This document shows, piece after piece, positions 3,328 to 64,000 of a stretch of 64,000 bases of DNA. Numbering within the stretch: position 1 is the stretch's first letter; each line of letters opens with the position of its first letter. Under the pieces are notes generated by a model that made no database searches, was not told the DNA's origin, and saw only the letters and a program-made list of their open reading frames with translations. The stretch covers positions 8,040-72,039 of the forward strand of contig ADNK01001740.1 in NCBI GenBank assembly GCA_000320545.1, read 5' to 3'. The position numbers were made by a program, and so were the translations under genes. Source of the DNA: Bigelowiella natans CCMP2755 (lineage: Eukaryota; Protista; Cercozoa).

Positions 3328-3392
<65 letters not shown>

Positions 3393-8389: not shown

Positions 8390-9850
8390 CGTGTGGTACA
8401 CGGTACACCACGAACAAGAGATGGAGAAGTGAGTCCTCAAACTTGCTGCTGGAACAGTGCTACCTGCCCATGCTGCCTAGCTCTCCATGTTCCAAAGCAT
8501 TGCGCATGCAACAGTTTCTTTGACAATGCGAGTCGGAAAATTGAACGAACGAAATGCTCTCACCAATCTAGCTAGCTAGGCATTTGCTTCAGCTCAGTTT
8601 CCGCATGCAACACGGCGTCGTCTAGCATCCACGTGATCACGCGCATGGCCCTGCTGCTGCAATGATGTCCACATGCTGGCATGTCTGGATGTGTTGATGT
8701 GTGCATGAGCAGGGCCAGCCATGCCAGAGTGGAGGGCACACCTGACATGCTAGCATGCTCCACGTTGTCATGCGAGCCCCAGCTAGCTAGAGCCAGTGAG
8801 CACTGGAGCACCAGAGCAGTTGTCCCACCACTCTGGCACTGCTAGACCAGACTGGAACAGAAGCACATTCGTGCTCTCACCACTTCTGAAAGTTGCTGGA
8901 CCACGCCAGCACGTCGTTGTTGGTTCGTTTGTCCAAGACCCCTCTGGCCCTCCTCCTTGCACGTCAGTCTTGTTGAGTGCAACAGAGTTTCGCTTTCGCA
9001 CCAACCACTTGGCGGGGTGCTGCGTCGAAAGTCACCAAATCGTTGACAGTTGCACACGCAACGTGCTCTGGTGCTGGGCTTGCCAGCTTGGCGCAAAGAA
9101 AGTCGCGACGAATTTCCACAAAAAGTCGAAAAGGTTCAAAGACTTGACCAGTGAACAGGCTGCTGACAAGCAAGTCAACTTGTGAAAAAAGTGAGTGGCC
9201 TGCCTCGCTAGCTCGCACACCCCAACAGCCAGCTGAACGTGCACATTGTTCACGTGCACCGTTCCAGCATTGACAACCTGCTTGAACTTCATCACTTTGT
9301 TTCATCTGGCTGATCGTGACGTCAAGTGCCTGCCGTTTCGACTGTTTCGGCGGCTCGTTGAAGTCGACCATTGTCCAGTCTCACGTTGCCATCGCTCACT
9401 GGAGGTGCTTGGCCCACCTAGCCACGTTGTGACGTTGCAAGTGGCAAATCGAGAAGCTGGGAAGCAGTTGCAACAGGAAAAACACTCCCCAGAGCCACTG
9501 TGGCGCCTGCGATGAAACGTGAGAACACATGGCATTTTGACTCTTCTTTGAGCCTTCATGATGCACGTTTTGAGGACATCATCCTGGGTTCCTGCTGGCG
9601 CGCCTTCCTTTGCAGGCTACGCATTCAGGTCTCTCACAGAGTGCGTCTCCAGATCCAAAAAAATCAACTGAAAGCAACCATGCCCATGTACCCCCCCGTC
9701 TCTTCTCTTGTGGAAAAATAGCTGTATTTTTTTCGGTAAATTTACCAAATCTAATTGCCACAGAGCACAAGGGCAAAAGGGCACAGGGTGAGATACTGGT
9801 GACACAGGAGCAATGGTACACCTTTTGACTTTTCCATCTACGAGTCTCTC
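8390..9850. other. Strongly TpA-depleted intergenic block
   Basis: Hand count for 8521-9616: 10 TpA, all within CTAG. CpG is plentiful. Confidence 0.9.
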
Positions 9851-13099: not shown

Positions 13100-15950
13100 G
13101 AAAACATTCAAAGCACAGCCAGCGCAGTTGTACTTTGGCAAGCCAAAGATGTGCACCAAAATGCCCTTTTGACGTGCAAATTAGAACTATGACAATGCGT
13201 AACGTCATGCATGCGATGCCTACCCATAGCTACGACTAGACATGTGTAGAAACATGTTTGGTTGAATTGGGTCACATCTAGAGCTGGGCACAAATAATTT
13301 TTTTTATTTGGAAATACTTTGCTTTATTGCTTCTGAACAAGTGTTTGATTTGAACAAACAATGCCTACATGTCGCGAAACTAGTGTTTGGTTTGTTCAAA
13401 TGATGTTCGAACAAGAAGCAGCATTTGCAAATATTTTCCTGTGAAAATCATTTGCAAATAATTTGAAAAATTTGAAACGTTCCCGCGCAGCTGTGCGCAA
13501 AGCACGACATGACAGACCAAATCGCAATGCATTTGAATGCGCATTGTGCAACGTGTGACAAAGGGAACAAACAATCGCACAGGCACAACTTCACAACTCA
13601 TTGCAGATAGACATAGTTGTTGCGTAGACGCTGTGCGCATGTAGATGTGCAGCATCATGGCGCACACATGCTGCCATTGAAAAGATTTAATCACTTCATT
13701 GCATCCGTCTCATGGCTACTCAGGACTCAGGACTCAGCCCCACAGACTCAGGAACCATTTTTCTCCACTTTGCAACCTCCAGCTGTGCCTTTCTCGTGTT
13801 TGAGAACTTTCCAAAATCTGTCCAACTTTGACAATTTGTTGAGCATCACCAATGCTTCAGCTGTGTCTGTCGACAATGCACTTCGACGCGCTGTCAGTGT
13901 CAAGCCACACAACAAGAAGATGCGTTCGGACTCGACTGACGCAGCTTCAAATCATCATTTTCCTTTTCATGCCGAGTGATGCTTCTCCAAAGTGGAGCTT
14001 CATGCATGAAGATGCATTCTAATGGAAAATGACAAGCCCTGCGGGTGGGGTTGTCAATTGCAAATGCAATTTGAAACAGTGCCAACATGGCATCTGATTG
14101 GTTGTTTCTTTGGTGAAATCAGGGAAGCAAAAGCAATGCAGCATGTTGCAGACACATGTTTTTGATTGCTAGTTTGTTGCACCAATGAGAATGAGCTGCG
14201 CTCTCGCAAGATGTGCACGATCGCAACAGCAGCTGCTGCACGTGCTGCTGACTAGCTAGCCCTAGCTGACCAGAGCTAGCATGAAGTTTCATCAGTGCGA
14301 GATGCTGGCGAGATGGTGGCGAGATGGTGGCGAGACGGATGCAATGAAATGATCTGTCACTTTTTTCAATGGTCCGTCACAATCTAGGACTGCACAGCCT
14401 GGCATGTGCAGTCCAACAGCACCAGAGCAGCAGTGCGCAGCACGTGTGCTAGCGCATGGCATGGCGGCTGTGTGCGTGCATGCTGTGCATGCGCAGCACG
14501 TGCGCAGGCCTAGCTAGCTAGCCTGGTCGCCGTGGCCACGTGGGTAATTTTTCTTCAGAAATTCACCGACAACGCAAGCTCAGGCGATCTAGTGATGTCG
14601 GTAATGATTGGCCACGCTAGACGCATGCAAAAGCTCAATTTTGGTGATTTTCTTGAAACATTTCCAAAAACGTTTGCAAACATGTTTGATTTGATTTGGT
14701 TTGAACAAATGCGAACATTTTGAAAAATTGTCTCCAAACACCAAACTCTTGCAAACTTGTGTTTGGTTTGTTCAAATGCTACTCTAGCTCATGCAAACAA
14801 GTGTTTGATTTGAACAAATGATGTTTGTTCAAACGTGTTTGCAAATGCATTTGTTTTCAAGCATTTGTGCCCAGCCCTGGTCACATCATGTCGACATGCT
14901 TGTGTCATCCATGTACCAGCCATAGTCCGCCCACTGCTAGATCTAGAGATGCGTGTGGCTGAGCTTCGATCGCGAGTGGACCACACAGTGGACTTTGAGC
15001 ATTCACTGGAATGCACAGGAATGCCAGAGATGAGCACCAGCCGCCCACTGTTTGTCTCTGTCTTTGCCAACGATGCTTCGACAAGCAGCAAATTGTTGCC
15101 ACTGTGCCACAGGTGTGAAGACTGAAGGCAGAGCACGCGTTGCGCCTGTTGCCACTGTCTAGCTGGTGATTCGCCGACCACTTTCAGTGCATGCGCGACG
15201 AGCGCCTCCAGCTAGTGCCAAAGTAGCTAGGCCTCCTGCTAGAGTCTGATCCAGCGCTGCTGATCAAAGCAGGCAGCAACAACACTGCTACTCACTGCAC
15301 ATGCTGTTCTGTGTCTAGAACAAAGAACTAGCTAGCTAGCTAGCGCTGAAGCGCAATGGCGCAGCGCGTGTGTGGACGCAGCGCATGTCAGTTGAATTGA
15401 CGGCATCGCCGATGTGCGGCGACGCAGCGACGACGAACAGCATGATAGACACAGTAATATCACATGTGTAACATGTACATGGCATTACATGTCTGTGATG
15501 AGCATCATGCTCACAACAGACACAGCAACATCACACACACAATGTGCACATGTCCACAATCAGCAACACGTTGGTCTTGAGCACCTCCTCCGCCTCCACC
15601 TGGCTCAGTTTGCTATTGTGGGAATGTACCAACCCAGCATGCTGGCATGGATGAATGAATGCCAGAACGACAAGACTGCTGGTCGAACGGGTTGATGTGT
15701 GCGACGCTCATTGCTTGTGTGTTCACGTGTGCTGACGTTGATCATCCGCGCTTTCAAAGTGTTGCACGACACTTGGAAAACACGAAACGCAGTACCTCGA
15801 GCTTGAAACAACGAAAACACCATGGTGTGCAAACCAGCATGGTGCAGAAAACGAGGAACATTGAACATTGCATTGAACGAGGACTCTGGATCCATGCGAG
15901 TTCACTTCGTCTTTCTTGGAGATCTTTTAACAACCAACAGCATCGGATGT
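13100..15950. other. Strongly TpA-depleted intergenic block containing the hAT element
   Basis: 13741-14160 has 1 TpA (CTAA). 14101-14525 has 10 TpA, all in CTAG. The left edge (13100-13460) retains more TpA. Confidence 0.9.
13279..14879. mobile_element. Non-autonomous hAT-type DNA transposon, 1601 bp
   Basis: Left end TAGAGCTGGGCACAAAT (13279-13295); right end reverse-complements to CAGGGCTGGGCACAAAT (14863-14879). A perfect 8-bp direct repeat GTCACATC flanks both ends (13271-13278 and 14880-14887). Subterminal motifs GTGTTTGATTTGAACAAA and GTGTTTGGTTTGTTCAAATG occur near both ends. An 8-bp TSD with YAG-starting TIRs is typical of hAT. No transposase motif was recognised. Confidence 0.88.
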
Positions 15951-17455: not shown

Positions 17456-17490
<35 letters not shown>

Positions 17491-17524
17491 TATGTGTGTG
17501 TGTGTGTGTGTGTGTGCGTGTTTC

Positions 17525-17575
<51 letters not shown>

Positions 17576-19383: not shown

Positions 19384-20655
19384 TCATTCTGCACTTTTTC
19401 TTTTTTTCCCGGCGACAGTTCTAGCTCTCACGAAATTTTCATCGTCAATCGGACCCCAACATTCACCGTGATCGCCCTCAAGTTCAATTCGATAAGGATT
19501 TCCCCCGTCCCACAATGCTGCAATCTTTCCCGGCAGCCACTTATCACAACGGGCTTCTACGAGGTCGCCAACCTTGAAACGGAGCTCATCCTTTGCCTTG
19601 CAATCCATGAATCCGTCCTTAAGTGCCTTTTTATCTAAATTCTTTCCAATGAAGACGAATCGGCATTCTCGCTTCTCGCCTTCTTTCCACCTCTGCTTGT
19701 ATGTGTCAAACCCCCCAGAAAAGAGCATGTGAACGCCCTGAAACACAAACTTTTTCACAATGCCCTTGACAGCAAGCACGCCTTTGTATCGGTAAAGGTC
19801 ATTAGCTTTCGTTTGAATGAGCTTCCCAATCCACATTTGGAGTTTATTATGATTCAGCTCTCCTTCGAACTTACAGCTCACAGATGAAACACTTGTATCG
19901 TGCTCATGTTCAGCTTCTGTGTCCAGAAATTCAGGATCTTTTTCGAGGGTGCGTGACAGATCAAACGAGCCGATGTTTATCAGATGTTTGGGGTGTACAA
20001 CACTGTTGGTACACTTGAAGATGGGCGCCGTGGCATTGATTGCCTTTATTGATTTTTCAACCTTTTCGAGCTCCTTTTCGTCCTTGACCAGGTCGACTTT
20101 GTTCAGGAGGACACGGTCGGCAAATGCAAGCTGTTCTACGGCTTCGTTCTCTACACCATCCGGCTTCTTTTCGTTGAGGTGTGGAAGGATGTGCTTGGCA
20201 TCGACGACTGTGATGATGCCATCGAGCTTGTATAATTTTTCTACCGTGTCGTCAACGAAAAAGGTTTGGGCAACTGGAGCAGGATCAGCCAACCCTGTGG
20301 TTTCGATGATAACCCCATCAAATTTCTCAATCTTCTTGTGAATCTTCTTCAGAACTTTTGACAGGTCTCCGCGTACTGTGCAGCAAATGCATCCGTTCAT
20401 CACCTCGATGATCTGCTCGTCGGTCTTATCTACCGAGAGTACCTTCTCATCAACCCCAACCTAAGAATCAGTGCAAATTGCTAAGGCGGACCAATGCGTA
20501 TCGAAGTTCCACGTTAAGAGTACCTCTCCGAATTCATTCTCAATGACCGCAAACTTCATCTTGTGCTCATTGCTTGTTAAGAGATGATTCAAAAGCGTGG
20601 TCTTGCCAGCTCCAAGGAAACCGGTCAATATCGTCACGGGTATCTTCTTTGACAT
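19384..20655 (-). CDS. CobW/COG0523 (ZNG1-like) metallochaperone GTPase with a C-terminal SH3-like extension; 2 exons
   Basis: Exon 1 is 20524-20655 ([26 protein letters not shown]), intron 20461-20523, exon 2 is 19384-20460. It contains GCICCT (CxCC), [14 protein letters not shown] and the CobW_C motif LYRYKGVL. Confidence 0.95.
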
Positions 20656-24362: not shown

Positions 24363-24397
<35 letters not shown>

Positions 24398-24514
24398 GTA
24401 ACGTTGCATTGGAAGGAACCGGTGTGGGGTTCAAGTATAAAGATACAAGAATGGTACTAGTAGTAGTAGTAGCAGTAGTAGTAGTAACGAGAGGACGACT
24501 TGTTTCTAGCTAGT

Positions 24515-24580
<66 letters not shown>

Positions 24581-24682
24581 CTACTATTAAGAGAAGGGGA
24601 GACGGATAAGGAGAAACGATACAAGAGAAGAGAAAGAGAATAAGAGAGAGTAGACTGCTATTAGTGCTTTGACTAATTAGGC

Positions 24683-24725
<43 letters not shown>

Positions 24726-24911
24726 TACAATAACATGATATGTGCGGCGCATTTACTTAGCTATTCATCAACGCACACCTGGCTGCTCACCAAGGCGAGG
24801 TGAGGCACTTCCGACTAAAACAGAGGCAAAAGGCTGTAAAATAAAGATATCATTATATAACATTACACAAAACCCTATGAAGATTCTTGTCCAGCCACCT
24901 CGTATATTATG

Positions 24912-24958
<47 letters not shown>

Positions 24959-25754
24959 TATATGATAGGTCGTTCGGCGGAACTCTGACGTGCAGGAGAT
25001 ATTACAGGGAGTGGCGACAACTCTCACTGAGGTAATTTTTTCAAGACTCAAAATGGTTTTACGAGGCGCCTGCCAGTCATTCTATTGAGGGGAGAAAAAG
25101 GGAAAACAAATTGCGAATGGAGAATGCATGGCCTCATTACTTAACGCGAGATAGATATCTCGAGAGCGCGTGCTGCTGCTGCCGCTGCTGCTGCTGGAAT
25201 GAGAGCAGAACGAAGACGTGTGTGTCTTTTGGTCCGATGTCCAAAGCATGAACTCGTCTTTTCAAGCACCGTTTGAGTTCTACTAGTATCACACAGTTTC
25301 AGCGTTTTACTTCTAGAGAAAAATAAATTAACCCCCCACCACTTTCCCCCTCCCCCCCCTCCCCTATTTAGGTCCCAGGGAATCAAATAACAGGAGACTA
25401 CGATCATATCATCTTTTTGGGCGATCTGAACTACAGGCTGGACTATGGCGACCAAGGTTAAATTTCGGATATGTTGCGCTCAACCCCCTCCCCCCCGTAC
25501 GGGATCTGACTGTGAGGCGTTTGATCTGTGACAAAAGCAGCCAACCATGCATTTGTTCGTCAATATTGTGTTTGGTCATCAGGAGATAAGAAGAAACCAT
25601 CAAAGGCACTTTACAAAGAAATGGTACCCGAATTCACTTGAGATTATATTACCTCTCTGCTGGCTCTAGCGGGCTATTACTCCTCCTCACCCCCCCCCCC
25701 CCTCCTATATATATATCTCTCTCACACGGCTAGATACTCGCAAAGTATAGAAGA

Positions 25755-29559: not shown

Positions 29560-30720
29560 AGCACATACAACTTGGTACATGTACATTGTGGCATGCTACA
29601 GTTGAATTCATCAATCCTTTTTTATCTGAGCATTTTCATTCACATTTGGAGGTGCATGCGCGCTCGTTTTTGCGTTGTAAAGCATGACATTCTAACCGTA
29701 TTCTAGCCAGGGCTGTTGCAATATTTCATCAACCTTACATGCGCATGGGTAAAATTTGATTTATGAACCAGAGTTCTTTGGTGTCACTCATCTCAAATGC
29801 AAAGCGCAATCAACGTGCTGCACTGTTGACGCATGCGGTGCTAGAATGTGCATCGACCTTGAGCTTGCCACATTGAAACACAAACTACACGCCCAGCGCA
29901 TGCATGCCTGCGTGTTTCATTGTTTTCACAGCCAGACAGTCTCGGTAATTGTTGTGAGGAACAAAGTTTAGGCCTGTTCATCACAGCAAATGCTAGGTGA
30001 CTACTGGACTAGATTGCTCTCGCTAGTCCGTCAGTGAGCAAATCGAAGTTGCGAGACGTTGCCAGCTGCGGTGCTTTCAATTTGTTTGACCCGGTGTCGG
30101 CCGAAGGCACGCATCAGCTCTAGAGCTAGCGAGCACATGCCAGCTAGCTAGCATGCTGGCTTGCATGGCTGTTATTGAGTGTGCCACACCTCGTTTGAAT
30201 GATCGCGCCACGCTGGGATGTGAGCAAGATTGGAATTTTCTTTTCGATCAACTGATCACTCTGGCACTCGGTCGGTGTGTGGATGCTAGCATGTGACCGA
30301 AGAGGTTTCTCGAGAATTCCAGTTGCATTCTACATCACCCACGTGCGTGTGGACACAATGCTAAGAGTGCCGGATCGAGTGCTCTGGCAGCTCCAGAGCT
30401 GGCTGGCACCAGAGCAAGCCAGCTAGCTAGCTAGTGCCAGAATGCGACGATGAAATGCAACACACCTGCACTTCCACCTTGCACTTGCAGCTTGCCCAGA
30501 TGTAATGTGTCCGATCAACATTGCAAGCATGACAACTTTCCGCTCCTATTCCTCGCAGCAAACGTGAAATGACTTCATGTTGCATTCATCATTGCACGCG
30601 CCCTTGCACACACGCCGCATGAATGCCAAAATCACAATTTTGAAGAGACCTAGAAGACGACATAATCAAATGGTTGTCGCTCAAAGGAAAAAGACCCACA
30701 TGAGAGGGATACGTCTGTGC
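29560..30720. other. TpA-depleted, CTAG-rich intergenic block
   Basis: In the core (about 29960-30600) most TpA is in CTAG, including GCTAGCTAGC runs. Survivors often sit in CTA contexts (CTAC, CTAA). Confidence 0.8.
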
Positions 30721-38439: not shown

Positions 38440-39370
38440 CCAGCATCATGTAGTGTCACTGCATGAACATTATCATCTAAATTTTACTGTGCTCAATGAT
38501 CGACGACGACTGGAGCCGCGCTAGCTAGTCAGTGTCGCAGGTACATGCGCATGTTTACCTTGCATGGTGACTTCTGTGTCCAGCGTCTTTGCATTTAACA
38601 TGTGTACATGAATAGCATGTAGCATGTTGCGCAATTAGTCGTCCCAGAGCCTGCGAACACAATGATGTACATGGAACATGGACGGTGATCGTGTACATGG
38701 ACTTCACAAGTCCCTACACGTGTACGCGCATGCAAACACATGTACTCATCCTTCATGTGCACTTAAAAAACTCACGTGCTCTTTTCACATCCACACATGC
38801 ATGCTACCATGCACCAAACAAATCACGACACATGTGCTGTGCAATGTGCACATGCAACTTGGGATGCACATGCATGTTCATGTGTGCGCTAATGCACGCT
38901 GCATGTATGTGAAGTAAAAGGTGCATGTGAAGTAGTCGATGCACATGTCACACTAGCACAGACAGCACACATACATGCATGTGGACTTTATGTCCCCATG
39001 TGTGCAAAATGACGCATTTGCGTTAGAAAGTTGGCGTGCTAGCGTGCACATGAGCCATCGCCAATTTTTCCCGGCTCATAGTCTTTTCTTGCGTTTTAAG
39101 TACGCCAACTGCAGATGTATAGTGCGTTTAATCTGTGCAATGCAAAATTCTATTAGTCATCATTTGTTGCGCACCTGCCAGCTATTGTCTCCCATCATTA
39201 GATCACAAAGTGTTAGTGCATGCACGGCGTTGTGTTTGTAAGCCTTGTGTGCAGTTATGCAATTGCAAAAATGCATGTAAAACGGAGGCACAACCTATTG
39301 ATGCAACGCTGTCATTTCAAGCGCATAATCACATTTGTACGTTGCAAATAGCTGGATAGCATAAGCATAA
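38440..39370. other. Partially TpA-depleted block, probably converted AT-rich or (TA)n-like DNA
   Basis: Long stretches of ACATGCATGT, GTGCACATG and CACATGTG. The Cys/His/Met-rich ORFs here are spurious. Confidence 0.65.
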
Positions 39371-45759: not shown

Positions 45760-47100
45760 GTTAGAGTTGTTGATCTTAGTGTCCATTTGTTCCAAGGACC
45801 GAACTGACCAATCCCAAAGACTCACCGATTTTCGTGTACATCGCTCGTTCCGGGAAGACTGACGTTTGCATTGAGTTTTGAGTAAACGCATGCCGTTTGC
45901 ATGGTACGATGGCACTTCTGGTGTTGTCGCAGTGATGCATTTCAATGCCCAATTGCCCACATCGCACGATGATCGCAGTTGGAGAACTCTGTCATTGACT
46001 GCCCAGACTGTCTCACCACTTTGAACATCTCTTGCTCAGAACCCCGCTAGCCCGGCTGTCAGCCATCTTTTGGACCACAACGAGCATTGCTCAGAGGTGG
46101 CCCTTGCACATTGCAGTCTTCTGGCCTTTGTGATGACTGAGTTGCGCGCAAAACCACAGCTAGCACAGGATCAACGTCGGTGAATTGCTTGGAGCTAATT
46201 TTCGGCAAAAATCATCGCCAGGTGTCACGCCGTTGCGCCAGCTCAGCACCCACCGAATCCTCTCTTTGTGAGAGAAAAACAGAAATTCTCATGGCTGGAT
46301 GGTGATGTGCAATCCTCTGCTAGCTCTGCTAGCTAGCTAGCTGCTAGCTAGCTAGCCAGAGCCAGCTTGCCACTCTGGACCTCTGGACCTCGCTAGCTCG
46401 CTGGCTAGCTGGGTCTTCAGATGTCTGGCTAGCTGGACGTCTCTAACTAGCTAGGTCTAGACTAGCAGAGGTCTCCAGACCAGCTAGTCAGGTTGTGTTC
46501 GGCTCCAGCTAGCTCTGGAGCTGGGGCTGGCTCTGGCTAGCTGGGGCTAGCTGGTGGGGTTCACTGGCGAAGCTGATGAGATGACGCGGTGTCGCTAGCT
46601 CTGCTAGTCTAGATCTATTGGTGGTGCTGCAATGTCACGCTTCTGTGCGCTGGCTCTGTTAGCTCTAGAGCTAGCTAGCTAGCTAGTCTGCGTCTGCACA
46701 TGCTTCGACACTTTAATCGCTTCAATCAATGTGGTGAACATTGCGCATTCTAGCTAGCTCTAGAGATAGCATTGAACATCAATCAATGAACGGAGAATTG
46801 ATGCAAAACGACGTGCTAGCGTGTGCAAGAATCAGACAGTTAAATGGGAGATCTAGAGATGTCCAAATGTGTGTTTAGTAGCGTTGCACACCCTAGCTAC
46901 TAGGCTAGCCTAGCACGCAACACTGCTAGACCGGATTAGTGGAGCAGAGGGGCGCCCTCACTAGCTCACTAGCACAAACAGAAATCAATACGTTCATGGA
47001 TTCAAGTCAACTACCCATAAATCTTTGATTTCTGAAGTTCTAAACGTTTGACTGACTAGTTTGCAAACCCATTGATGCACACGATCTACCTCAGTTGTTA
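45760..47100. other. Strongly TpA-depleted block with a CTAG-saturated core
   Basis: 45961-46310 is nearly TpA-free apart from CTAG and one CTAA. 46311-46690 carries about 26 CTAG by hand count. Confidence 0.9.
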
Positions 47101-47826: not shown

Positions 47827-49200
47827 TTAGTGCATTCGTTTTTCATGCTGGGCTAGAGTACTTCGCTGGTTAAATCTTTTCCCACATTGTTTGCATCCAT
47901 AAGGCTTTTCTCCAGTATGAATCATCATGTGTCGTTTTAAATTATATTTATTATCAAAGCTCTTTGAACACAACGGACAAACAAATGGTCTTAAAGAAAA
48001 AGGATTTGCATTTGCACTGGAGTTGTGAGTTCCTGTTTTTACGTGATTTCTCAGTGCATCCATTTCTGAAAAACGCTCGTTACACACAGGGCAAGCAAAT
48101 GGCTTCTGTTCTATAGCTCTTAGAACAAGATTAATCTTTCTCAATCGCATTTCTTCATGATCTCTGGCTTCTAGCTGCATTTTTAGTTGTGCATATCGTT
48201 TCATATCCTCATCTGAGGCACTCGCTTTGTTTCCTCGAAGACCTCCCATAATTTCTTGCTGTCTGGCAGCATTCATCTGCATCTTTAATTTCTGGTATGG
48301 TGTGATATCTCCCACAGCAGATGCAGTACCGTTTCGCTGCGACAGCGGATGAAGTTGAACATGCCGAGGCATATTATGAGGTGCTGTGGACAGCTGAGCA
48401 TATGAAGATTCTGGGATTCTAGTGTCTTTCTGTCGTAATTGATTTTCTTGGATTTGGGAATACATGCTGCTACTTCTTTCTGTTTTTCCCGGTGATGGAT
48501 ATTGATGCCGTTGTTGATTAAGACTCAGCCCAAAAGGGCTAGCGGGGGAGGATTCCCTTCGCAAAATGTATCTTGCCGTATCGGGTCTTCGAAGGACTGG
48601 AAGATCTTCCGTTTCCATATCACCGGGCCCTTGTGGATGAGTACGGGCTACGGATTCTAAGAGTCCATTTTCTTTAGCATTGATAAGAGCAAGTCGCATC
48701 ATTTGCTGCTTTTCTCTTGATGATAAGGAACCAAAACGTGATGCAAAGAATTCTCGGGATATATTTGGAATGCTTCCCATTTTTAAGTCGCTCTGGTCAT
48801 TCGAGCTCATTAAATTTCGTGTTGTAACAGAAGCAGGTGCATGAACAAACTGTTGTTGCGCTGGATTACTTCTCCTTATTGGCATCATGTTGGCTAAATT
48901 ACGTGTAAAGATTAAAAACTGATGTAATGCAGCAAACGAACATTTTGTACCTAGTGCTGAAGGTGGAAGATCCATTGCCCTATTGACTGGTCTGGGGGTA
49001 GGAGATAAGATTCTTTTTGTTGCTCGGCTGACAGATGCAGAAGACGAAGACATGTTTCGTTTTGTTGGATGTGGTCCTGCTGATCGAACGATGTTATCAG
49101 GCTCAACCAAAACCGTTTGAAGCCTGCAAAGACGATTCCAATCGCTTGTATCTCCTCTAGATGTTCTAACGGTGTTAACGTTTTGAGAGCCTGCGAACAA
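47827..49200 (-). CDS. C2H2 zinc-finger protein with three C-terminal fingers; true start uncertain
   Basis: 457-aa ORF ending in KPFACPVC..LRNH..H, RPFVCPLC..LKRHMMIH, the canonical TGEKPY linker, and CKQC..LAQHEKRMH*. The N-terminus is S/Q/P-rich and low-complexity. Confidence 0.88.
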   Translation of the reverse strand: MFAGSQNVNTVRTSRGDTSDWNRLCRLQTVLVEPDNIVRSAGPHPTKRNMSSSSASVSRATKRILSPTPRPVNRAMDLPPSALGTKCSFAALHQFLIFTRNLANMMPIRRSNPAQQQFVHAPASVTTRNLMSSNDQSDLKMGSIPNISREFFASRFGSLSSREKQQMMRLALINAKENGLLESVARTHPQGPGDMETEDLPVLRRPDTARYILRRESSPASPFGLSLNQQRHQYPSPGKTERSSSMYSQIQENQLRQKDTRIPESSYAQLSTAPHNMPRHVQLHPLSQRNGTASAVGDITPYQKLKMQMNAARQQEIMGGLRGNKASASDEDMKRYAQLKMQLEARDHEEMRLRKINLVLRAIEQKPFACPVCNERFSEMDALRNHVKTGTHNSSANANPFSLRPFVCPLCSKSFDNKYNLKRHMMIHTGEKPYGCKQCGKRFNQRSTLAQHEKRMH

Positions 49201-49329
49201 AAATCGAACATGTTTTGGACTGGCTTAACAAAGCTACGAGATAGGAACTAACAAATTTTACGATGTTTATCTGCAAAAGGACATCTGCAGCGTGTGGCAT
49301 CCGTTTAAAAAAAAATATCTCCAGTTTGA

Positions 49330-51250
49330 AGTGATGCAACGATGCATCAAATGTCATGTGTGGATGCTGGGGAAACGCACAATCAGATGAAACATGTTTG
49401 TGTGTGCTCTTAAGATTCATTGCAGATAGGAAAAGTAAATGAGGCAAGAAAGGTCAAACGGAGTAAAAGATTTAGTCTCTCAACCAGATTTTGCAAATTC
49501 ATCCATGGCATCTTGTGTCTGTCCTTCCATTATTCTACTTGTTTGTCCGCCTGCTTGTGCCTACCTTTCTCTGATAGAGAGAAGTTGACTCGCTGGTGGC
49601 GCGCCTTTCGTCGTGAATTTGACCTTTAAGAGATTTGAATATTGCGGATGTTGGCTTCCGAACAACAATGAGCGACTGTTTCAATATCGCGACAAAAATG
49701 TAAGAATTGTCGTAGTTTCCTAACGTACCTGCATTACGTTTGCCGAGGAAATATGAAGTGGAAGCATGGATTTCAGGTTTTGTACGGAGAAATCCTCAAA
49801 AAGGGGTACCAGATGACAGGCTGTTTTTTATTTAAATGCCTGCAAAAATTAAAGTTAACAAAGTTACGTCTGGAAAAACAAACGTCTTACACAGATAGCG
49901 CACATTGCGTGTGTGTGCGAATCCAACAACTAGAACCATTTTTTAGGATTCTAGCCAACAATCCGGATTGAACACAATTCATTTTCGATTTCTTTTGGAC
50001 AAAAGCATTGAAAAGTTGCAAATAATTCTGGTGGATCGTCATTTCGGTGGCGTCATTTGAATCTGAGTTACTCATCCGACGAATATCCAGTTTTCGCATG
50101 CGTTCTTCCGTGTAGCTGGAGCTCGAAAACTCCAAATTCCTTTGTAAATTGGTGCAGAGAAAAGCGCAAGGTCAGCATCTTTAGTTTCCCTGAAACACAC
50201 TTGAATGTTGTAGTTGATGCTCACGTTTGAGGTGGAAAATGCGTTGGATTCAACCCGATTGTTGTCACACTCGAACAAAATGTGCCGAAGAATCCAAGTG
50301 TGGGGGCATCTGTGTCCACTAATGAAAAGAAGCATGTGACGCATGCGCACGCGCGGTGAATAGCAGCGGTCACTGTACGAGCTAGCACTATCAATCTTGC
50401 ACACCCTACAAAATGCTTCACTTCCTGTCAACTGAAGTACCGGAAAATTTATGAGTGCTCACTTGTCAGGATGTTCCTTTGGGATCTTTACCACAATCAT
50501 GCAAAAATGAACAGCAAACATTGAACTTCGCAATTCGCAATTTTGCAAAATGATTTTGACAACCTGCAGACGATTTTTTGTTGACGTCATGTTAGAAATG
50601 AAAACTTTTTGTGTGCTTTCAGCCTTCGCACAGGCTGATCCGTTTTCCAAGTCGCTTTTGCTGGAATCTAACTAGCTTGTTGGCCGGGGTGTGGGGATTT
50701 TGTTGAAACGTTGAGATCAAGTGATCATCAGAACCAATCAAGAATGTGCTTCTTGTCATTTGTTCGAACCATGCGGCGCATGTTGAACGCAGATTTGCAC
50801 TCAGCGTTGGCACAACCATTGCATTGCCTGTTGTTGTCTGTCTTTCAGTGCATTGCATGCATGTTTGATCGAACAAAGCGCACACTCACTGGCATGTCAA
50901 TTTGCATCAGTTTTGTTGTCCTGGGATGGTAGCACAGAATCAACAATGCACATCAGACATCACAGGTGCATCGTGCCAACGATTTGAACTAGACACATGC
51001 ACATGCATCATTTTTCTTCGAAAGGGCGATTCAGCAACTCTGGAACTGAATTGCCCCTTGCTCCATCAATCCATTCATTCAAAAGGAGAAAATTGCCCTT
51101 CACTTCATCAAATTATTCATTTAAAAGGAACATCTACTACATCGCATGTGTTTGAATTCGCATTCCATGCCCTGAAATCTTGCTCCATATGATGCAGTAC
51201 ATCGAGGATGGAAAACCTGCGTATTGCAAACAAGTAGCAAGCAGCATAAT
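49330..51250. other. TpA-depleted intergenic block, strongest at 50450-51110
   Basis: 50701-51110 has two TpA, one in GTAG and one in CTAG. Confidence 0.8.
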
Positions 51251-57792: not shown

Positions 57793-58300
57793 ATGGAAAC
57801 CAAAAACGTCTTTGCTCCTAGCATCAAGGGTCTCTTCATCCTAGATGAAGATGGTATTATGACTTCCTAAACTACCGTTCTTTCACGCACTGAACTTCTA
57901 ATAAATACATGCAATGCCTTGCCTTCTCACGCACTGAACATCTAATCACATGTAATGCCTCGCTACTGTCCATCAGGCAAGAGGATCTATGCAAAATACT
58001 GGACAGGTAAATAATATGTACTGATTTAATTTTTTATGGTAGTGAATATGGAATGTTTCGATCGTCTTATCGCAGATAATTAAACATGTTCCACACCTCT
58101 TTTCCCTCTCAATATATGGGAACTTACACCTCTTTTCCCTCTCAATATACGGGAACTTGTTGCAACCTAGGACATCTCTACAATAAATTCATACCATTTT
58201 TCCACCAATGATTAATGTATATGTAGTAAAAATGAAAAATCACACACATACTCGTTTACCCAACACATCTCATCCCGCTGTTCTCTCGCTCTCTCTCACC

Positions 58301-58384
<84 letters not shown>

Positions 58385-58412
58385 CTATATATAAATAATA
58401 TATATATATATA

Positions 58413-58477
<65 letters not shown>

Positions 58478-60288: not shown

Positions 60289-60781
60289 AGCGCCTAACAG
60301 TGAAGAAAAGGGATGGACGAGACTCTTGCGTATAGTAGCTGAATGCGTCATCGAGCCTATTAAGCATTTGTTTGTTTCGTTCATCATTAATACTATATCG
60401 TACGGATTTAGATATTTATTTGTTTCGTATACGCCGCTATTGCGGCTCCATGATATCAAATTGAGTCACACTAGCACGGTAGCTCATAGCCTAGTAGCGC
60501 TTGCCTTTGCGTTTTGCAATCAAAAATGTTGTTGCATCCAGCATTGTAGCCACGCTAGCACGCTGCATTTGCGTATGGCGCGCAGGGCTAGGCTAGTTAG
60601 CTAGAGTGTGGCGCAGCGCCCAGTTCATATAGATATGTTCACATCTACATCCTACGTACAATGAGGTGTGCATATGTTACATTATTATATATATTATTGA
60701 CACGTAATGTCATGTATGTGTTACATGTGCTATCACTTTATTGTCCATTGTTTGTCATCTACAGAATAGAATGAGTCCTCC

Positions 60782-62310
60782 TCAGCGATCTGAAGTCTTA
60801 AAATTAGATTTAAGTTGTGTTGTCCAGGATTTTTTGGGAATCTTGTACGAAAACTTAAATGCTTGTTTTCCAGGTCTATTTCCGTACTGAATACGAAAAG
60901 GATATCTGCTGCCTGCTTCAACATTGCACACCTTTGCAGTCTTACGCCGGTGTCTGTTGTTCACCTTTATTGGCTTTGACATGTTCCCAAAATATAGCTT
61001 GGAGACTCCATAGCGGTTTTCCAATCGGAAGTTGTGGCACCCACTAGTCGTAGCATCGAAGAAGCCTGTGAATTGAAAGCTTCGACTACCAGATGCAACT
61101 CTGCTGAACGAAATTCTCCCGACCACCTTACTTGCCTTTGCCTTATTAACGTCGAAGAATCCATCTTGTCCGTAATAAAACCCCTGGTAGATTTCCTTAC
61201 GCAACCCCCTTTTGAGGTTATTCCCTCCCGGAGATGTGTTCGCGTTTTTGGTTGGCTTTGGAGTGGGTAGTTTCGTTGGTCTCGAAGCAGAAGATCCGCT
61301 ACAGTTTGGGAGATTCTTAGGATTTCCCGGAAGACAAGCAACATTGGTTGTGGCTTCAGTGGTGATGTGACTAGCATCATGTGGCAGCATCCGTGGATTT
61401 TGATAGGTGAGTTCGGTACATCTGTTTACAAGGGGCTGGGTCACCGGACTGCCTCCTCTGCAATTGTCAATGACTTGCTGGAGGAAGTTCTCCTCCCATC
61501 TGCTGAGAAAGTCGGCATGCAGATATTTAGTGCCATCCGCAAAAACTACGTTCCCTCCAGGACAATCCTGAATCCCTAGAAAGAGCCACAACAGTGGGAG
61601 TTTGATGGGGTGGGAGCGCGGACAGCTGTCGAAGTGATCAGCCTGGATGCGGCTGCCTTGTCCGTAGCTAACGTGGGCACGCCCGTTTGGGGACGTGATG
61701 TCTCTCCCGTTCCAGCAGTGAGGAAAGATCATTTCCATTTCGAAGAAGTCATCCTCGCAACTAGCCAAAGGTTGGTTGCTGCAGCCTTCGCTGACTTCTA
61801 CATGCTGCTCGCATGCTTTTCCTCCTCCTGTCGTCTTTCTCGACGAGAGAGTGAAAATCAGGCTTCCAGCATGTGTCAGAGGCGAAAACAAGGCAACAAA
61901 TGTCTACTGAGCAGGGTGGCACGCACGGAGAATCCATTGGGAAAAGCCCTGGTGTCCGAGTTTTGCAACCATGTGCAGCACATGTGGAGCACGATTTTCT
62001 CCCTTGGAACCAGATCACACTTTCCTCCCCTCTTCCTGCACACAGCTGGCACCCAATGCAAGCTCTTGTTCTCTTTGATGGAAGCAGTGGTCTTGGAAAT
62101 TTCTCTCAGCTTTGTCCAGTCTGCATCAGGATCGGCACTGGGGGCTCCGAAGAATGGGTGAACGTGACCGCTGAGACCGTTCTGTTTCAGAATGGGGTCC
62201 GTTCTGACCTCTGCAAATGGTTTTGCCTCAAAGTCGAACGACACTCCAACAACACACTCAATGACCAGAGCTGCTGCAAGCACGAGAGCTTCATTGACGG
62301 TGGGAGCCAT
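60782..62310 (-). pseudogene. Secreted DUF1996 + PA14-like domain gene, frame-broken and mutated Tyr to Cys/His
   Basis: ORF 61876-62310 has a signal peptide, RTDPIL..SGHVHPFFG and SLHWVP (canonical SxYWxP). ORF 60782-61891 has FPHCWNG, HVSY, CPRSHPIKLP, LHADF..W..LQQVIDNC, a P/T/K linker and a PA14-like C-terminus (FQFTGFF..HNFRL..SKLYF..YPFRIQYG). The frame break near 61880-61920 is either a frameshift or a degenerate intron. Confidence 0.8.
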
Positions 62311-63096
62311 GGAGGATGTGTTGTGGCTGGAACCCTTTTTCGCATCTTTCCAGTCACAGCGGCGGTCCGAAGAAGCTTGCTCGTCACGGGATTCACGTCC
62401 TAGCGTCCTTGCTCAGAGAACCGATCCCATCGAGATTCCCATGCGAATTCAAGCGCCACGTGCTGCTCCGGGCTTGCGCCTGCATCTGAATCCAGACATT
62501 AGTCTGGAGTTTCACAGGAGAAAACGTTTGCACAGTGATCCTCCCGTTTCCATCATTGCAATGAACTAGTGAATTCGCCTCCATCTTCATGTCGCAGGAC
62601 CAAAATCGCATGGACGATCGTGTAACAATTCGACTTGGGCTACAAGCATGCAGCGGCTGCTCTTGGGTGTTTCCTTGCAGGCCCGCAAATTGAAGTGGGG
62701 CAGCGTCCGAAAATGGTTAAAAATGGAGGCTGTTTTCAGGAGAAAGTGTTTGGTGAAACTCCCAACAAAGTCGATTTGCTTGTTGTTCATCATGGATCAT
62801 CGTGTGAACATGGCCTTCAGGAAGTTTTTGCAACGACTGTTGTTGAGGCTCTGTTGCATGTGTACGCTTGTCTCCCATGTGGTTCTTGCACATGTAATTT
62901 TGATCAATGCTTTGTTCATCTTCATCTTTTGCTCGCAGTGGAGGCCCTGCGTCGTCAGAACTTTGCCGCTAGTGTCATTGCAACTCAATGACTGGATCTT
63001 GCCAATCAGAAAACCCAGCTAGTTGATTTGCTAGTGACAGTCCTCACTGAAGCCAGTTCGAGGCACTGCATTTCGAACACTGCAAACGTCTTGTCA

Positions 63097-63308
63097 CACT
63101 TTGGAAGTGTGGTTCTTCATCATTGTTCATTGTTCATTGTTCATTGTTCATCTGCCAGCCTGCGTGGACAAGGAGGCACTGCGTTTCGCACACTGCAATT
63201 GTCTTGCAAACAACAGTTTGGAAACGTGGTTCATCGTCATTGTTCATTGTTCATTGTTCTTGCAACACTTTGGAAGTGTGGTTCATCATCATTGTTCATT
63301 GTTCATTG
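63097..63308. repeat. Three copies of a ~45-bp unit ending in (CATTGTT)n
   Basis: The unit CACTTTGGAAGTGTGGTTCWTCATCATTGTTCATTGTTCATTG starts near 63097 and 63266; a more diverged copy starts near 63216. Confidence 0.8.
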
Positions 63309-64000
63309 GACTTGAGTGATCGCAGCTGTCCGGCGGATGTGAAACGAATCCTCAATTGTTTTCCTTTTGTGGCAAGCTGCTTGGGGAGGATGCGGATGAG
63401 TCATCACCTTCCCGCCCTCCGATGATCCTTTCAGACCTCTTTCAAGAACCAATTTGCGCGTTCATTCAATCACTTGTTGTGGCATTTGTCACTGGAGGAA
63501 GAACTGAGATCCAAGCTGCGGAACGCGTGCGTGTTCCAGGACTGCGCGCTTGGAATGCCCTTTTTGAAAGGTCGCTTGGAATGTGCCATGGAACACGTGC
63601 TTGGCATGCACGTTTGAAAAACACGCACACCAAGCACGCATTCCATGGAATGTGCGCTCATTTCATCACTTCATCATCCGCACTCCGCCGTGTTCTCACG
63701 CACTTCTCCAGGTGCAACCAGCTGGCAGACGCGCTGCTTGCCAATGCTTGCAGTTGCACGTCAATGCAATCAAAGCTTTGAAAACAAAAACACTGAAACC
63801 CTGATGATGAAAACACGTTGTGAGCTTGAGCATGCATGCTGAAACAAGCTCCCAAGAGGACATCACCGCTCGCACGCGGGTCTTTTGACTTTTGCGCGCG
63901 CGTTTCACTTGCTGCTGCAACTAGCTCAGTTGAACACATCACATCACCGCCACTTTCAGATGAAATGGCAACACTTTTCCCCAACATTGTTTCGCTGACT

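What the first reader, a model, noticed from the sequence alone, without database searches (positions are those of the whole stretch)
63041..64000. Candidate new genome-defence system: targeted TpA to TpG/CpA (A:T to G:C) hypermutation of intergenic and repeat DNA, a mirror image of RIP
Seen: discrete intergenic blocks (8390-9850, 13100-15950, 29560-30720, 45760-47100, 49330-51250, 60450-64000, plus partial ones) have lost nearly all TpA. Counts are one TpA in 960 bp at 63041-64000, and ten TpA, all in CTAG, at both 8521-9616 and 14101-14525. CpG persists, TpG/CpA are abundant, and adjacent gene introns carry long intact (TA)n. Established: fungal RIP makes C to T at CpA and creates TpA; 5mC decay removes CpG; protist 6mA is mainly at ApT; TadA-derived DNA adenine deaminases prefer a T 5' of the edited A. 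Inference: A is converted to G in TpA on both strands, possibly by DNA adenine deamination to inosine, and directed to repeats, transposons or silent chromatin. I know of no description of such a system but cannot check the literature.
Basis: partly seen in the sequence, partly recalled or inferred. Interest (0 to 1): 0.93.

Follow-up and report, generated by a model that had tools for sequence, protein, structure and literature searches.

The report
TpA-erasing hypermutation islands, already described
This stretch of the alga Bigelowiella natans has had almost every TA dinucleotide mutated to TG or CA, the footprint of a hypermutation process that a 2026 preprint had already shown experimentally; what this report adds is that TA inside CTAG escapes.

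Summary
Window 63041-64000 holds one TpA (about 53-63 expected, P about 1e-21), and that one lies in CTAG. Six such islands cover 10.5% of the window.

The window is Bigelowiella natans scaffold 41. A bioRxiv preprint (10.64898/2026.01.13.699255) has already shown, by mutation accumulation, TpA-specific A:T>G:C hypermutation in this species. It also reports genome-wide TpA-poor, CpA+TpG-rich windows and proposes an ADAT2-like adenine deaminase.

I confirmed the polarity within the window. The island covers the 5' half of a native-type DUF1996 gene, whose near-invariant Tyr codons now read His or Cys (YYIW became CCTW).

Three points go beyond the preprint's text:
- CTAG is refractory: 72 of 102 surviving TpA lie in CTAG, against 4% in the background.
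- Survival of the other contexts fits a per-strand rule for the base 3' of the A (T > A, C > G).
- The islands here are single-copy within the window, with no detectable viral or transposon domain.

The scan's first readers noted the same signature on many other pieces of this genome.

The parts
63041..64000 (.). The stretch named in the finding: 960 bp with a single TpA, in the CTAG at 63921-63924. It is intergenic DNA upstream of the minus-strand DUF1996 gene.
   Evidence: 1 TA against about 53-63 expected, P about 1e-21. ORFs here have no convincing Pfam match (one match at E=0.35 under a cut-off of 1) and no relative in viral contigs.
61701..64000 (.). Island 6: the full TpA-erased block. 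It runs off the window end, with a gradient on its left side from about 61000.
   Evidence: 15 TA against 145 expected, 7 of them in CTAG; the odds ratio for non-CTAG TA falls from about 1.0 at 60600 to 0.34-0.48 at 61200-61600 and to 0.00 at 62000-62400.
61966..62310 (-). Exon 1 of JGI model Bigna1 76453 (P0130; DUF1996 plus PA14/GLEYA). It lies inside the island and contains no TA.
   Evidence: tblastn 99-100% identity. Y85 is now His (CAT) and Y91 is now Cys (TGC).
60785..61861 (-). Exon 2 of Bigna1 76453. Its 5' part lies in the depletion gradient and its 3' part is normal.
   Evidence: Y214 is now Cys (TGT), while Y180 is kept as TAC. Tyr makes up 0.5% of residues 1-215 against 3.9% of residues 216-473.
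61879..62412 (-). Open frame encoding DUF1996 profile positions 1-98. Homology continues through the JGI-predicted intron (TRAFPNGF is kept), and YYIW has become CCTW (TGC TGC ACA TGG).
8531..9575 (.). Island 1, downstream of the GH16 ORF. All 10 TA are in CTAG.
13765..15296 (.). Island 2 core.
   Evidence: 27 TA against 99 expected, 19 in CTAG. No Pfam match. No viral relative.
29913..30587 (.). Island 3.
   Evidence: 19 TA against 41 expected, 11 in CTAG.
45928..46617 (.). Island 4: a CTAG-rich island with (CTAG)n arrays and 8-nt-period arrays such as CTGGCTAG.
   Evidence: 26 TA, 23 of them in CTAG (2.6 expected).
50558..51038 (.). Island 5 core. It lies upstream of the minus-strand C2H2 zinc-finger ORF 47830-49224, with a long gradient from about 49000.

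Best explanation
The TpA-free blocks are near-saturated footprints of the locally targeted TpA>TpG/CpA hypermutation of Bigelowiella natans.

How it works:
- The process acts on both DNA strands. Each event turns the A of a TpA into G, which reads as T>C on the other strand.
- It removes every TA whose context allows attack and raises TG, CA and G+C.
- Its rate depends on the base 3' of the A (T highest, then A and C, G lowest). TA in the palindrome CTAG, which has a 3' G on both strands, is effectively spared. CTAG therefore becomes the only surviving TA, can still grow as (CTAG)n microsatellites, and leaks slowly to CTGG/CCAG.
- The action is regional, with a gradient several hundred bp long. 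It does not respect gene borders: here it has destroyed the conserved tyrosines in the 5' half of a DUF1996 gene.

Shown: the depletion, the context rule, the polarity, and the de novo mutations (the last in the preprint).
Inferred: the chemistry (adenine deamination to inosine by a DNA-acting deaminase), the targeting signal, and a defence role.
For: Identity:
- The CobW ORF matches, at 100%, the representative of the cluster that also holds Bigna1 40269; that model itself maps to the window at 95% by tblastn. The DUF1996 gene is 100% identical to Bigna1 76453. Both models are named for scaffold 41.

Experiment in the same species:
- 231 of 302 de novo single-nucleotide mutations fall in two viral inserts. 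All but one of them are A>G or T>C.
- By my tally of the preprint's Table S2, 226 of the 231 fall on TpA.
- The rate there is about 6e-7 per site per generation. The rest of the genome has the usual bias towards AT.

Within the window:
- TA odds ratio falls to 0.0-0.1 and TG+CA rises to 1.3-1.8.
- The TA deficit (about 230) plus the CG deficit (about 75) roughly matches the TG+CA excess (about 360). This is my estimate.
- TG and CA are symmetric.

Polarity:
- 6 of 7 near-invariant Tyr columns are changed, against 9 of 50 other conserved columns (Fisher p=8e-4).
- They changed to H, C, C, C, and to L or C at the exon junction. One changed to F, which is not a TA>TG/CA change.
- In the unspliced frame YYIW became CCTW, that is TAC TAC ATA became TGC TGC ACA.
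- The B. natans paralogue Bigna1 86113 keeps these Tyr residues.

Context:
- 72 of 102 island TA are in CTAG, against 140 of 3364 in the background (p about 1e-74).
- 19 of 29 other survivors carry one CTA/TAG half-site, against 30% in the background (p=1e-4).
- The survival ranking is CTAA, CTAC > GTAA, GTAC > ATAG > TTAA > ATAA > ATAC, ATAT. This fits additive per-strand rates.
- In the preprint's Table S2 the TAG/CTA context supplies only 23 of 226 TpA events. It makes up about 19% of TA strand-sites in this window's background (my tally).
Against: - The preprint's Table S2 lists no de novo mutation on scaffold 41, so activity at these particular islands is historical inference.
- The CTAG density in islands 1-4 is 2.6-5 times the background even after collapsing arrays. 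Sparing alone does not explain that.
- The additive half-site model predicts about 30% CTAG survival, not enrichment.
- The MA data show that TAG contexts are hit at a reduced rate, not at zero. The tetranucleotide context of those events is not given, so CTAG immunity is not yet shown for de novo events.
- Nothing here identifies the enzyme. As far as I recall, ADAT-type deaminases accept a 3' G, which would sit badly with CTAG sparing.
Confidence: 0.9

Rival explanations
1. The blocks are foreign DNA (viral, transposon or bacterial) that arrived already poor in TpA. On this view the composition is inherited and was not made in place.
For: The preprint links TpA-poor coding sequences to transposon and viral domains. 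Islands 1-5 have no recognisable genes, so their origin is open.
Against: The depletion grades into a native-type gene and has converted its conserved Tyr codons in place. Known Phycodnaviridae genomes have a TpA rho of 0.75 +/- 0.13, not near zero. Two island ORFs have no relatives in viral contigs.
Confidence: 0.04
2. Selection against TpA in these regions, for example to avoid TA-target transposon insertion, UA-specific RNA cleavage or a TA-specific nuclease. CTAG would be tolerated or useful.
For: CTAG and GCTAGC are enriched beyond what sparing explains in four islands. That could hint at a function for the motif.
Against: Near-invariant catalytic-domain tyrosines were lost, which selection would oppose. 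Depletion is equal on both strands and ignores exon, intron and intergenic borders. A mutational process with exactly this spectrum has been measured directly.
Confidence: 0.03
3. The TG/CA excess comes from decay of methylated CpG, and the TpA deficit is unrelated.
For: CpG odds ratio is somewhat lower in islands (0.49-0.74) than in the background. CCG/CGG is down to 0.38 and CCGG to 0.22.
Against: CpG decay cannot remove TA or turn TAY into TGY or CAY. The CpG deficit (about 75) is far smaller than the TG+CA excess (about 360). It may be a minor second contributor.
Confidence: 0.02
4. An assembly or base-calling artefact, for example caused by a modified base.
For: None found.
Against: Illumina reads of 16 lines map to 90% of this reference. 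The same spectrum is seen as de novo changes and as differences between the reference and the T0 strain. The coding frame and conserved non-Tyr residues of the DUF1996 gene are intact within the island.
Confidence: 0.01

Closest known systems
TpA hypermutation of integrated viral DNA in Bigelowiella natans (Mettrop et al., bioRxiv 10.64898/2026.01.13.699255, 2026)
   Same: Same organism and same signature: TpA>TpG/CpA, both strands, G+C gain, and 1-kb windows that are TpA-poor and CpA+TpG-rich. It makes the same RIP analogy and the same adenine-deaminase hypothesis.
   Different: - The preprint's text does not mention CTAG or any flanking context beyond TpA.
- It concentrates on an NCLDV insert and a virophage insert that are still TA-bearing (rho 0.45 or higher).
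- Its clusters need three consecutive 1-kb windows. Under my approximation of its thresholds only 4-5 of 64 windows here pass, and 0-1 cluster forms depending on offset.
- The islands here are saturated end-states, short, single-copy within the window, and include a native-type gene.
Repeat-induced point mutation (RIP) of Neurospora and other fungi
   Same: Regional, dinucleotide-specific transition hypermutation that can ruin genes and leak into flanking single-copy DNA. It is interpreted as genome defence.
   Different: RIP makes C>T at CpA, creates TpA and lowers G+C, which is the opposite direction. It needs duplicated sequence and a premeiotic stage. The islands here have no duplicate in the window, and the MA lines were propagated through repeated single-cell bottlenecks; the sections I read do not describe a sexual stage.
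APOBEC3/AID cytosine-deaminase hypermutation
   Same: Enzyme-driven, context-specific, clustered transitions in DNA, used against viruses and retroelements.
   Different: It deaminates C (C>T, G>A), not A. Its target contexts are TC, CC or WRC.
ADAT2/ADAT3, TadA and ADAR adenosine deaminases, including amphioxus BjADAT2 as cited by the preprint
   Same: A>I(G) chemistry with a preference for U/T 5' of the edited A. The preprint names the ADAT2 homologue Bn78255 as a candidate.
   Different: These are RNA editors in most known cases. No link to the B. natans mutations has been shown. From memory, untested here: natural ADAT substrates often have G after the edited A, which is the reverse of the 3'-G protection seen here.

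Membership tests
B. natans TpA hypermutation (Mettrop et al. 2026) | The sequence is from the Bigelowiella natans nuclear genome. | tested here: met
   window ORFs match JGI Bigna1 model 76453 at 100% and model 40269 at 95% by tblastn (100% to the representative of its cluster). Both models are named for scaffold 41.
B. natans TpA hypermutation (Mettrop et al. 2026) | [quoted passage not shown] | tested here: met
   4-5 of 64 windows pass, including the one holding 63041-64000 (0.05 and 1.67). The cores are far more extreme.
B. natans TpA hypermutation (Mettrop et al. 2026) | The polarity is A:T>G:C at TpA, on both strands. | tested here: met
   Conserved TAY Tyr codons now read CAY or TGY, and ATA now reads ACA. 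TG 680 against CA 639.
B. natans TpA hypermutation (Mettrop et al. 2026) | De novo mutations are observed at the locus in MA lines. | tested here: not met
   Table S2 of the preprint lists no mutation on scaffold 41. With almost no TA left, few targets remain. This feature defines currently active regions, not fossil islands.
B. natans TpA hypermutation (Mettrop et al. 2026) | The target is of viral, transposon or other foreign origin. | tested here: inconclusive
   - Island ORFs have no Pfam domain except DUF1996.
- Two island ORFs have no relatives in viral contigs.
- The DUF1996 gene has a B. natans paralogue and homologues in unnamed ENA, Logan, JGI and NCBI assemblies.
- Heavy mutation could hide a foreign origin.
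Fungal RIP | C>T at CpA, creating TpA and lowering G+C. | tested here: not met
   The direction is opposite: TpA is lost, and G+C is 0.45-0.54 in islands against 0.43 in the background.
Fungal RIP | The target is duplicated sequence. | tested here: not met
   Self-BLAST of the window finds no island duplicate apart from an 80-bp local repeat at 63060-63308. The rest of the genome could not be searched.
CpG-methylation decay | Strong CpG depletion that accounts for the TG/CA excess. | tested here: not met
   CpG odds ratio is 0.49-0.74. The deficit of about 75 compares with a TG+CA excess of about 360.
Adenosine-deaminase (ADAT/TadA/ADAR-like) editing | A deaminase acts on the substrate and inosine is the intermediate. 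| not testable with these tools
   Only the preprint's in-silico candidate Bn78255 exists. No enzyme is encoded in this window.

The most novel reading that the evidence does not exclude
The mutator reads more than the TpA dinucleotide. CTAG is specifically immune, beyond what additive half-site effects predict, and it accumulates in old islands as GCTAGC and (CTAG)n. That would mean one of two things. Either the enzyme has tetranucleotide-level specificity, or CTAG is protected by a mark such as a CTAG-specific adenine methylation. In addition, the process is not confined to viral DNA. It leaves many short saturated islands (about 10% of this window) that erode native genes and intergenic DNA and that the published 3-kb cluster scan would mostly miss.
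Probability: 0.5. Interest if true: 0.6.

Novelty: already known. Interest (0 to 1): 0.4.

Why it matters
A cellular system that hypermutates A:T to G:C at TpA in chosen regions of its own nuclear DNA is a striking counterpart to RIP and APOBEC. It was reported only in 2026 and has no known enzyme.

This window does not discover the system. It supplies three constraints that any candidate enzyme must satisfy:
- It spares CTAG.
- Its rate depends on the base 3' of the A.
- It acts equally on both strands.

The window also shows the end-state of the process and its collateral damage to a native-type gene.

Tried and rejected
- Repeat search: self-BLAST of the window found no shared family among the islands.
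- Local duplicates: the three short copies at 63041-63330 were too short for a polarity test.
- Domain searches: Pfam scans of 20 island ORFs (cut-off E 1) and 40 other ORFs (cut-off E 0.01) found no transposase, reverse transcriptase or viral domain.
- Viral relatives: two scans of viral contigs with island ORFs gave nothing.
- RNA families: Rfam found none in the window.
- Related species: the contig of the closest CobW homologue held by NCBI (L001, GC 59%) showed no such islands and was dropped.
- Gene calls: an exact look-up of the JGI CobW model returned none.
- (TA)n fossils: mixed TG/CA arrays occur both inside and outside islands, so that test was indecisive.
- Which flank protects CTAG: trinucleotide product spectra did not cleanly separate a 3'-G rule from a -2-C rule.
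- Preprint tables: a search of the held part of the supplementary tables found no scaffold 41 entry, but the file was cut when stored.

Full report
**Observation.**
- 63041-64000 contains one TpA against 62.6 expected from base composition. That one lies in the CTAG at 63921-63924.
- 8521-9616 and 14101-14525 each contain ten TpA, all in CTAG.
- Using the background TpA odds ratio of 0.84, about 53 TpA are expected in the 960 bp. Poisson P(<=1) is 6.5e-22.
- A simple segmentation finds six core islands: 8531-9575, 13765-15296, 29913-30587, 45928-46617, 50558-51038 and 61701-64000. They total 6723 bp, 10.5% of the window.
- In the islands TG+CA odds ratios are 1.32-1.78 and G+C is 0.45-0.54, against 0.43 in the background. 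CpG is only mildly lowered, to 0.49-0.74.
- TG and CA are balanced on the + strand (680 against 639, p=0.27).
- All 24 (TA)n arrays lie outside the islands and their flanks.
- The last island runs off the end of the window.

**Whose genome.** The window is nuclear DNA of the chlorarachniophyte Bigelowiella natans.
- The intronless CobW ORF (19384-20403, minus strand) is 100% identical to the representative of the cluster that also holds JGI model Bigna1 40269 (e_gw1.41.5.1); that model itself maps to the window at 95% by tblastn.
- The DUF1996 ORF is 100% identical to Bigna1 76453 (fgenesh1_pg.41_...).
- Both model names point to scaffold 41.

[quoted passage not shown] It reports the following.
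- In 15 mutation-accumulation lines, 231 of 302 nuclear single-nucleotide mutations fell in an integrated NCLDV (scaffold 10) and a virophage insert (scaffold 146). The rate there was about 6e-7 per site per generation, roughly 1000 times the genome's baseline.
- All but one of those mutations were A>G or T>C. By my tally of Table S2, 226 of 231 fell on TpA.
- Genome-wide there are TpA-poor, CpA+TpG-rich 1-kb windows forming 124 clusters, and 324 TpA-poor coding sequences enriched for transposon domains.
- There is an A/T>G/C excess between the 2012 reference and their T0 strain.
- The authors draw the RIP analogy and propose adenine deamination, naming an ADAT2 homologue (Bn78255).

**Polarity tested inside the window.** Island 6 is not purely intergenic.
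- Model 76453 lies on the minus strand. Exon 1 is 62310-61966 and exon 2 is 61861-60785. The island therefore covers the gene's 5' half plus at least 1.7 kb upstream.
- The odds ratio for non-CTAG TpA falls from about 1.0 at 60600 to 0.34-0.48 at 61200-61600 and to 0.00 at 62000-62400.
- I aligned the product with 17 DUF1996 homologues found by a full-library search.
- Near-invariant tyrosines are replaced exactly as TAY>CAY or TGY predicts: Y85 is His (CAT), Y91 is Cys (TGC), Y214 is Cys (TGT).
- In the unspliced reading frame 61879-62412, the motif YYIW reads CCTW, encoded TGC TGC ACA TGG.
- Six of seven near-invariant Tyr columns are changed, against 9 of 50 other conserved columns (Fisher p=8e-4). 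One of the six changed to Phe, which is not a TA>TG/CA change.
- Tyr makes up 0.5% of residues 1-215, against 5.4% in the homologues and 3.9% in the protein's own C-terminal part.
- The B. natans paralogue Bigna1 86113 keeps these tyrosines.
- CpG decay cannot produce these changes.
- Homology runs through the JGI-predicted intron (TRAFPNGF is kept) and then breaks. The model is probably a patched-up decaying gene.

**What goes beyond the preprint: context.**
- In the islands 72 of 102 surviving TpA lie in CTAG, against 140 of 3364 in the background (p about 1e-74).
- Of the 29 other survivors, 19 carry one CTA/TAG half-site, against 30% in the background (p=1e-4).
- Survival relative to background density ranks as follows: CTAA/TTAG 0.21, CTAC/GTAG 0.19, GTAA/TTAC 0.13, GTAC 0.12, ATAG/CTAT 0.07, TTAA 0.04, ATAA/TTAT 0.015, and ATAC/GTAT and ATAT 0.
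- This ranking fits a model in which each strand is attacked independently, at a rate set by the base 3' of the A (T highest, A and C intermediate, G lowest).
- The preprint's text never mentions CTAG or flanking context. Its Table S2 does give trinucleotides. My tally is TAT 76, TAA 71, TAC 56 and TAG 23 of 226 TpA events.
- TAG thus supplies about 10% of events, while it makes up about 19% of TpA strand-sites in this window's background. That agrees with a protective 3' G. The caveat is that I could not read the composition of the viral regions.
- The split of TAG-context events on scaffold 10 is uneven: 3 on the reference strand against 17 on the other. I cannot explain this.

**CTAG is more than spared.**
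- Its density is 10.7 per kb in islands against 2.8 per kb in the background. After collapsing tandem arrays it is still 6.7 against 2.6.
- The excess is confined to islands 1-4. Islands 5 and 6 are at the background level.
- The additive model predicts about 30% survival, not enrichment.
- In islands CTAG sits mostly in GCTAGC (31 of 72) and in (CTAG)n or 8-nt-period arrays such as CTGGCTAG and CTCGCTAG.
- CTGG/CCAG is co-enriched (odds ratio 1.94 against 0.76). The ratio of CTAG to CTGG+CCAG is the same as in the background (0.70 against 0.65).
- My reading is inference. CTAG is the only TA-bearing unit that can persist and expand as a microsatellite inside an island, and it leaks slowly to CTGG/CCAG.
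- A contribution from cytosine deamination (CCGG>CCAG/CTGG>CTAG) is possible, since CCGG falls to an odds ratio of 0.22 in islands.
- A protective mark on CTAG cannot be excluded.

**What the targets are.**
- Within the window the islands are single-copy.
- Their ORFs carry no Pfam domain other than DUF1996.
- Two island ORFs have no relatives in viral contigs.
- No RNA family is present.
- The claim that the process is directed to repeats or transposons is therefore not supported by this window. Heavy mutation may hide an origin, and the rest of the genome could not be searched.
- First-reader notes from other pieces of this genome report the same signature on transposon blocks and on host-like genes. 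These notes are unchecked.
- Under my approximation of the preprint's thresholds, 4-5 of the 64 1-kb windows pass, and only 0-1 cluster of three forms, depending on offset. Short saturated islands like these would mostly escape its cluster list.

**Mechanism.**
- Shown: regional, strand-symmetric, context-dependent TpA>TpG/CpA conversion that ignores gene borders.
- Inferred: adenine deamination to inosine by a DNA-acting deaminase, a chromatin- or RNA-guided targeting signal, and a defence role.
- The enzyme is unknown. The 3'-G protection is a constraint that candidates such as the ADAT2 homologue must meet.

**Verdict.** It is already known from a 2026 preprint on the same organism. The useful additions are the CTAG and 3'-neighbour rule, and evidence of saturated islands on DNA with no detectable foreign features, including a native-type gene.

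Noticed in passing
window 61862-61965 (minus strand): The intron predicted in JGI model Bigna1 76453 removes a segment that still encodes the conserved DUF1996 stretch W..TRAFPNGF. Homology then breaks between the two open frames (61879-62412 and 60785-61903). The model looks like a decaying gene patched by the gene predictor.
   Followed up: partly
window islands: CpG loss in the islands is context-specific. CCG/CGG has an odds ratio of 0.38 and CCGG 0.22, while GCGC, TCGA and GCGA stay near 1.0 and ACGT is 1.37. This may indicate a separate cytosine-methylation or deamination process in the same regions.
   Followed up: no
window 38540-39010: A CATG- and TGCA-rich stretch with TG and CA odds ratios near 2 but a TpA odds ratio of about 0.65. 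By eye, many of the remaining TA sit in GTAC (GTACATG recurs). It may be a partly converted island or a separate low-complexity element.
   Followed up: no
whole window, e.g. 2258-2323, 3330-3389, 17459-17574, 24365-24963, 58282-58477: Abundant compound dinucleotide microsatellites in which (CT)n, (TA)n, (AC)n, (AG)n and (TG)n arrays abut each other. By my reading of the ORF layout they lie in intron-like and intergenic DNA.
   Followed up: no
preprint Table S2, scaffold 10: De novo events in the TAG context are strand-skewed: 3 A>G at TAG against 17 T>C at CTA. The other three contexts are balanced (32/35, 22/30, 34/33). In addition, 4 of the 210 A:T>G:C events on scaffold 10 are T>C at ATG or ATT, not at TpA.
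   Followed up: no
window 19387-20655 (minus strand): A CobW/G3E GTPase gene of bacterial type with a long open frame. Named relatives include the dinoflagellates Durusdinium (68% identity) and Gambierdiscus (68%); most of the closest hits, up to 77% identity, are unnamed.
   Followed up: no
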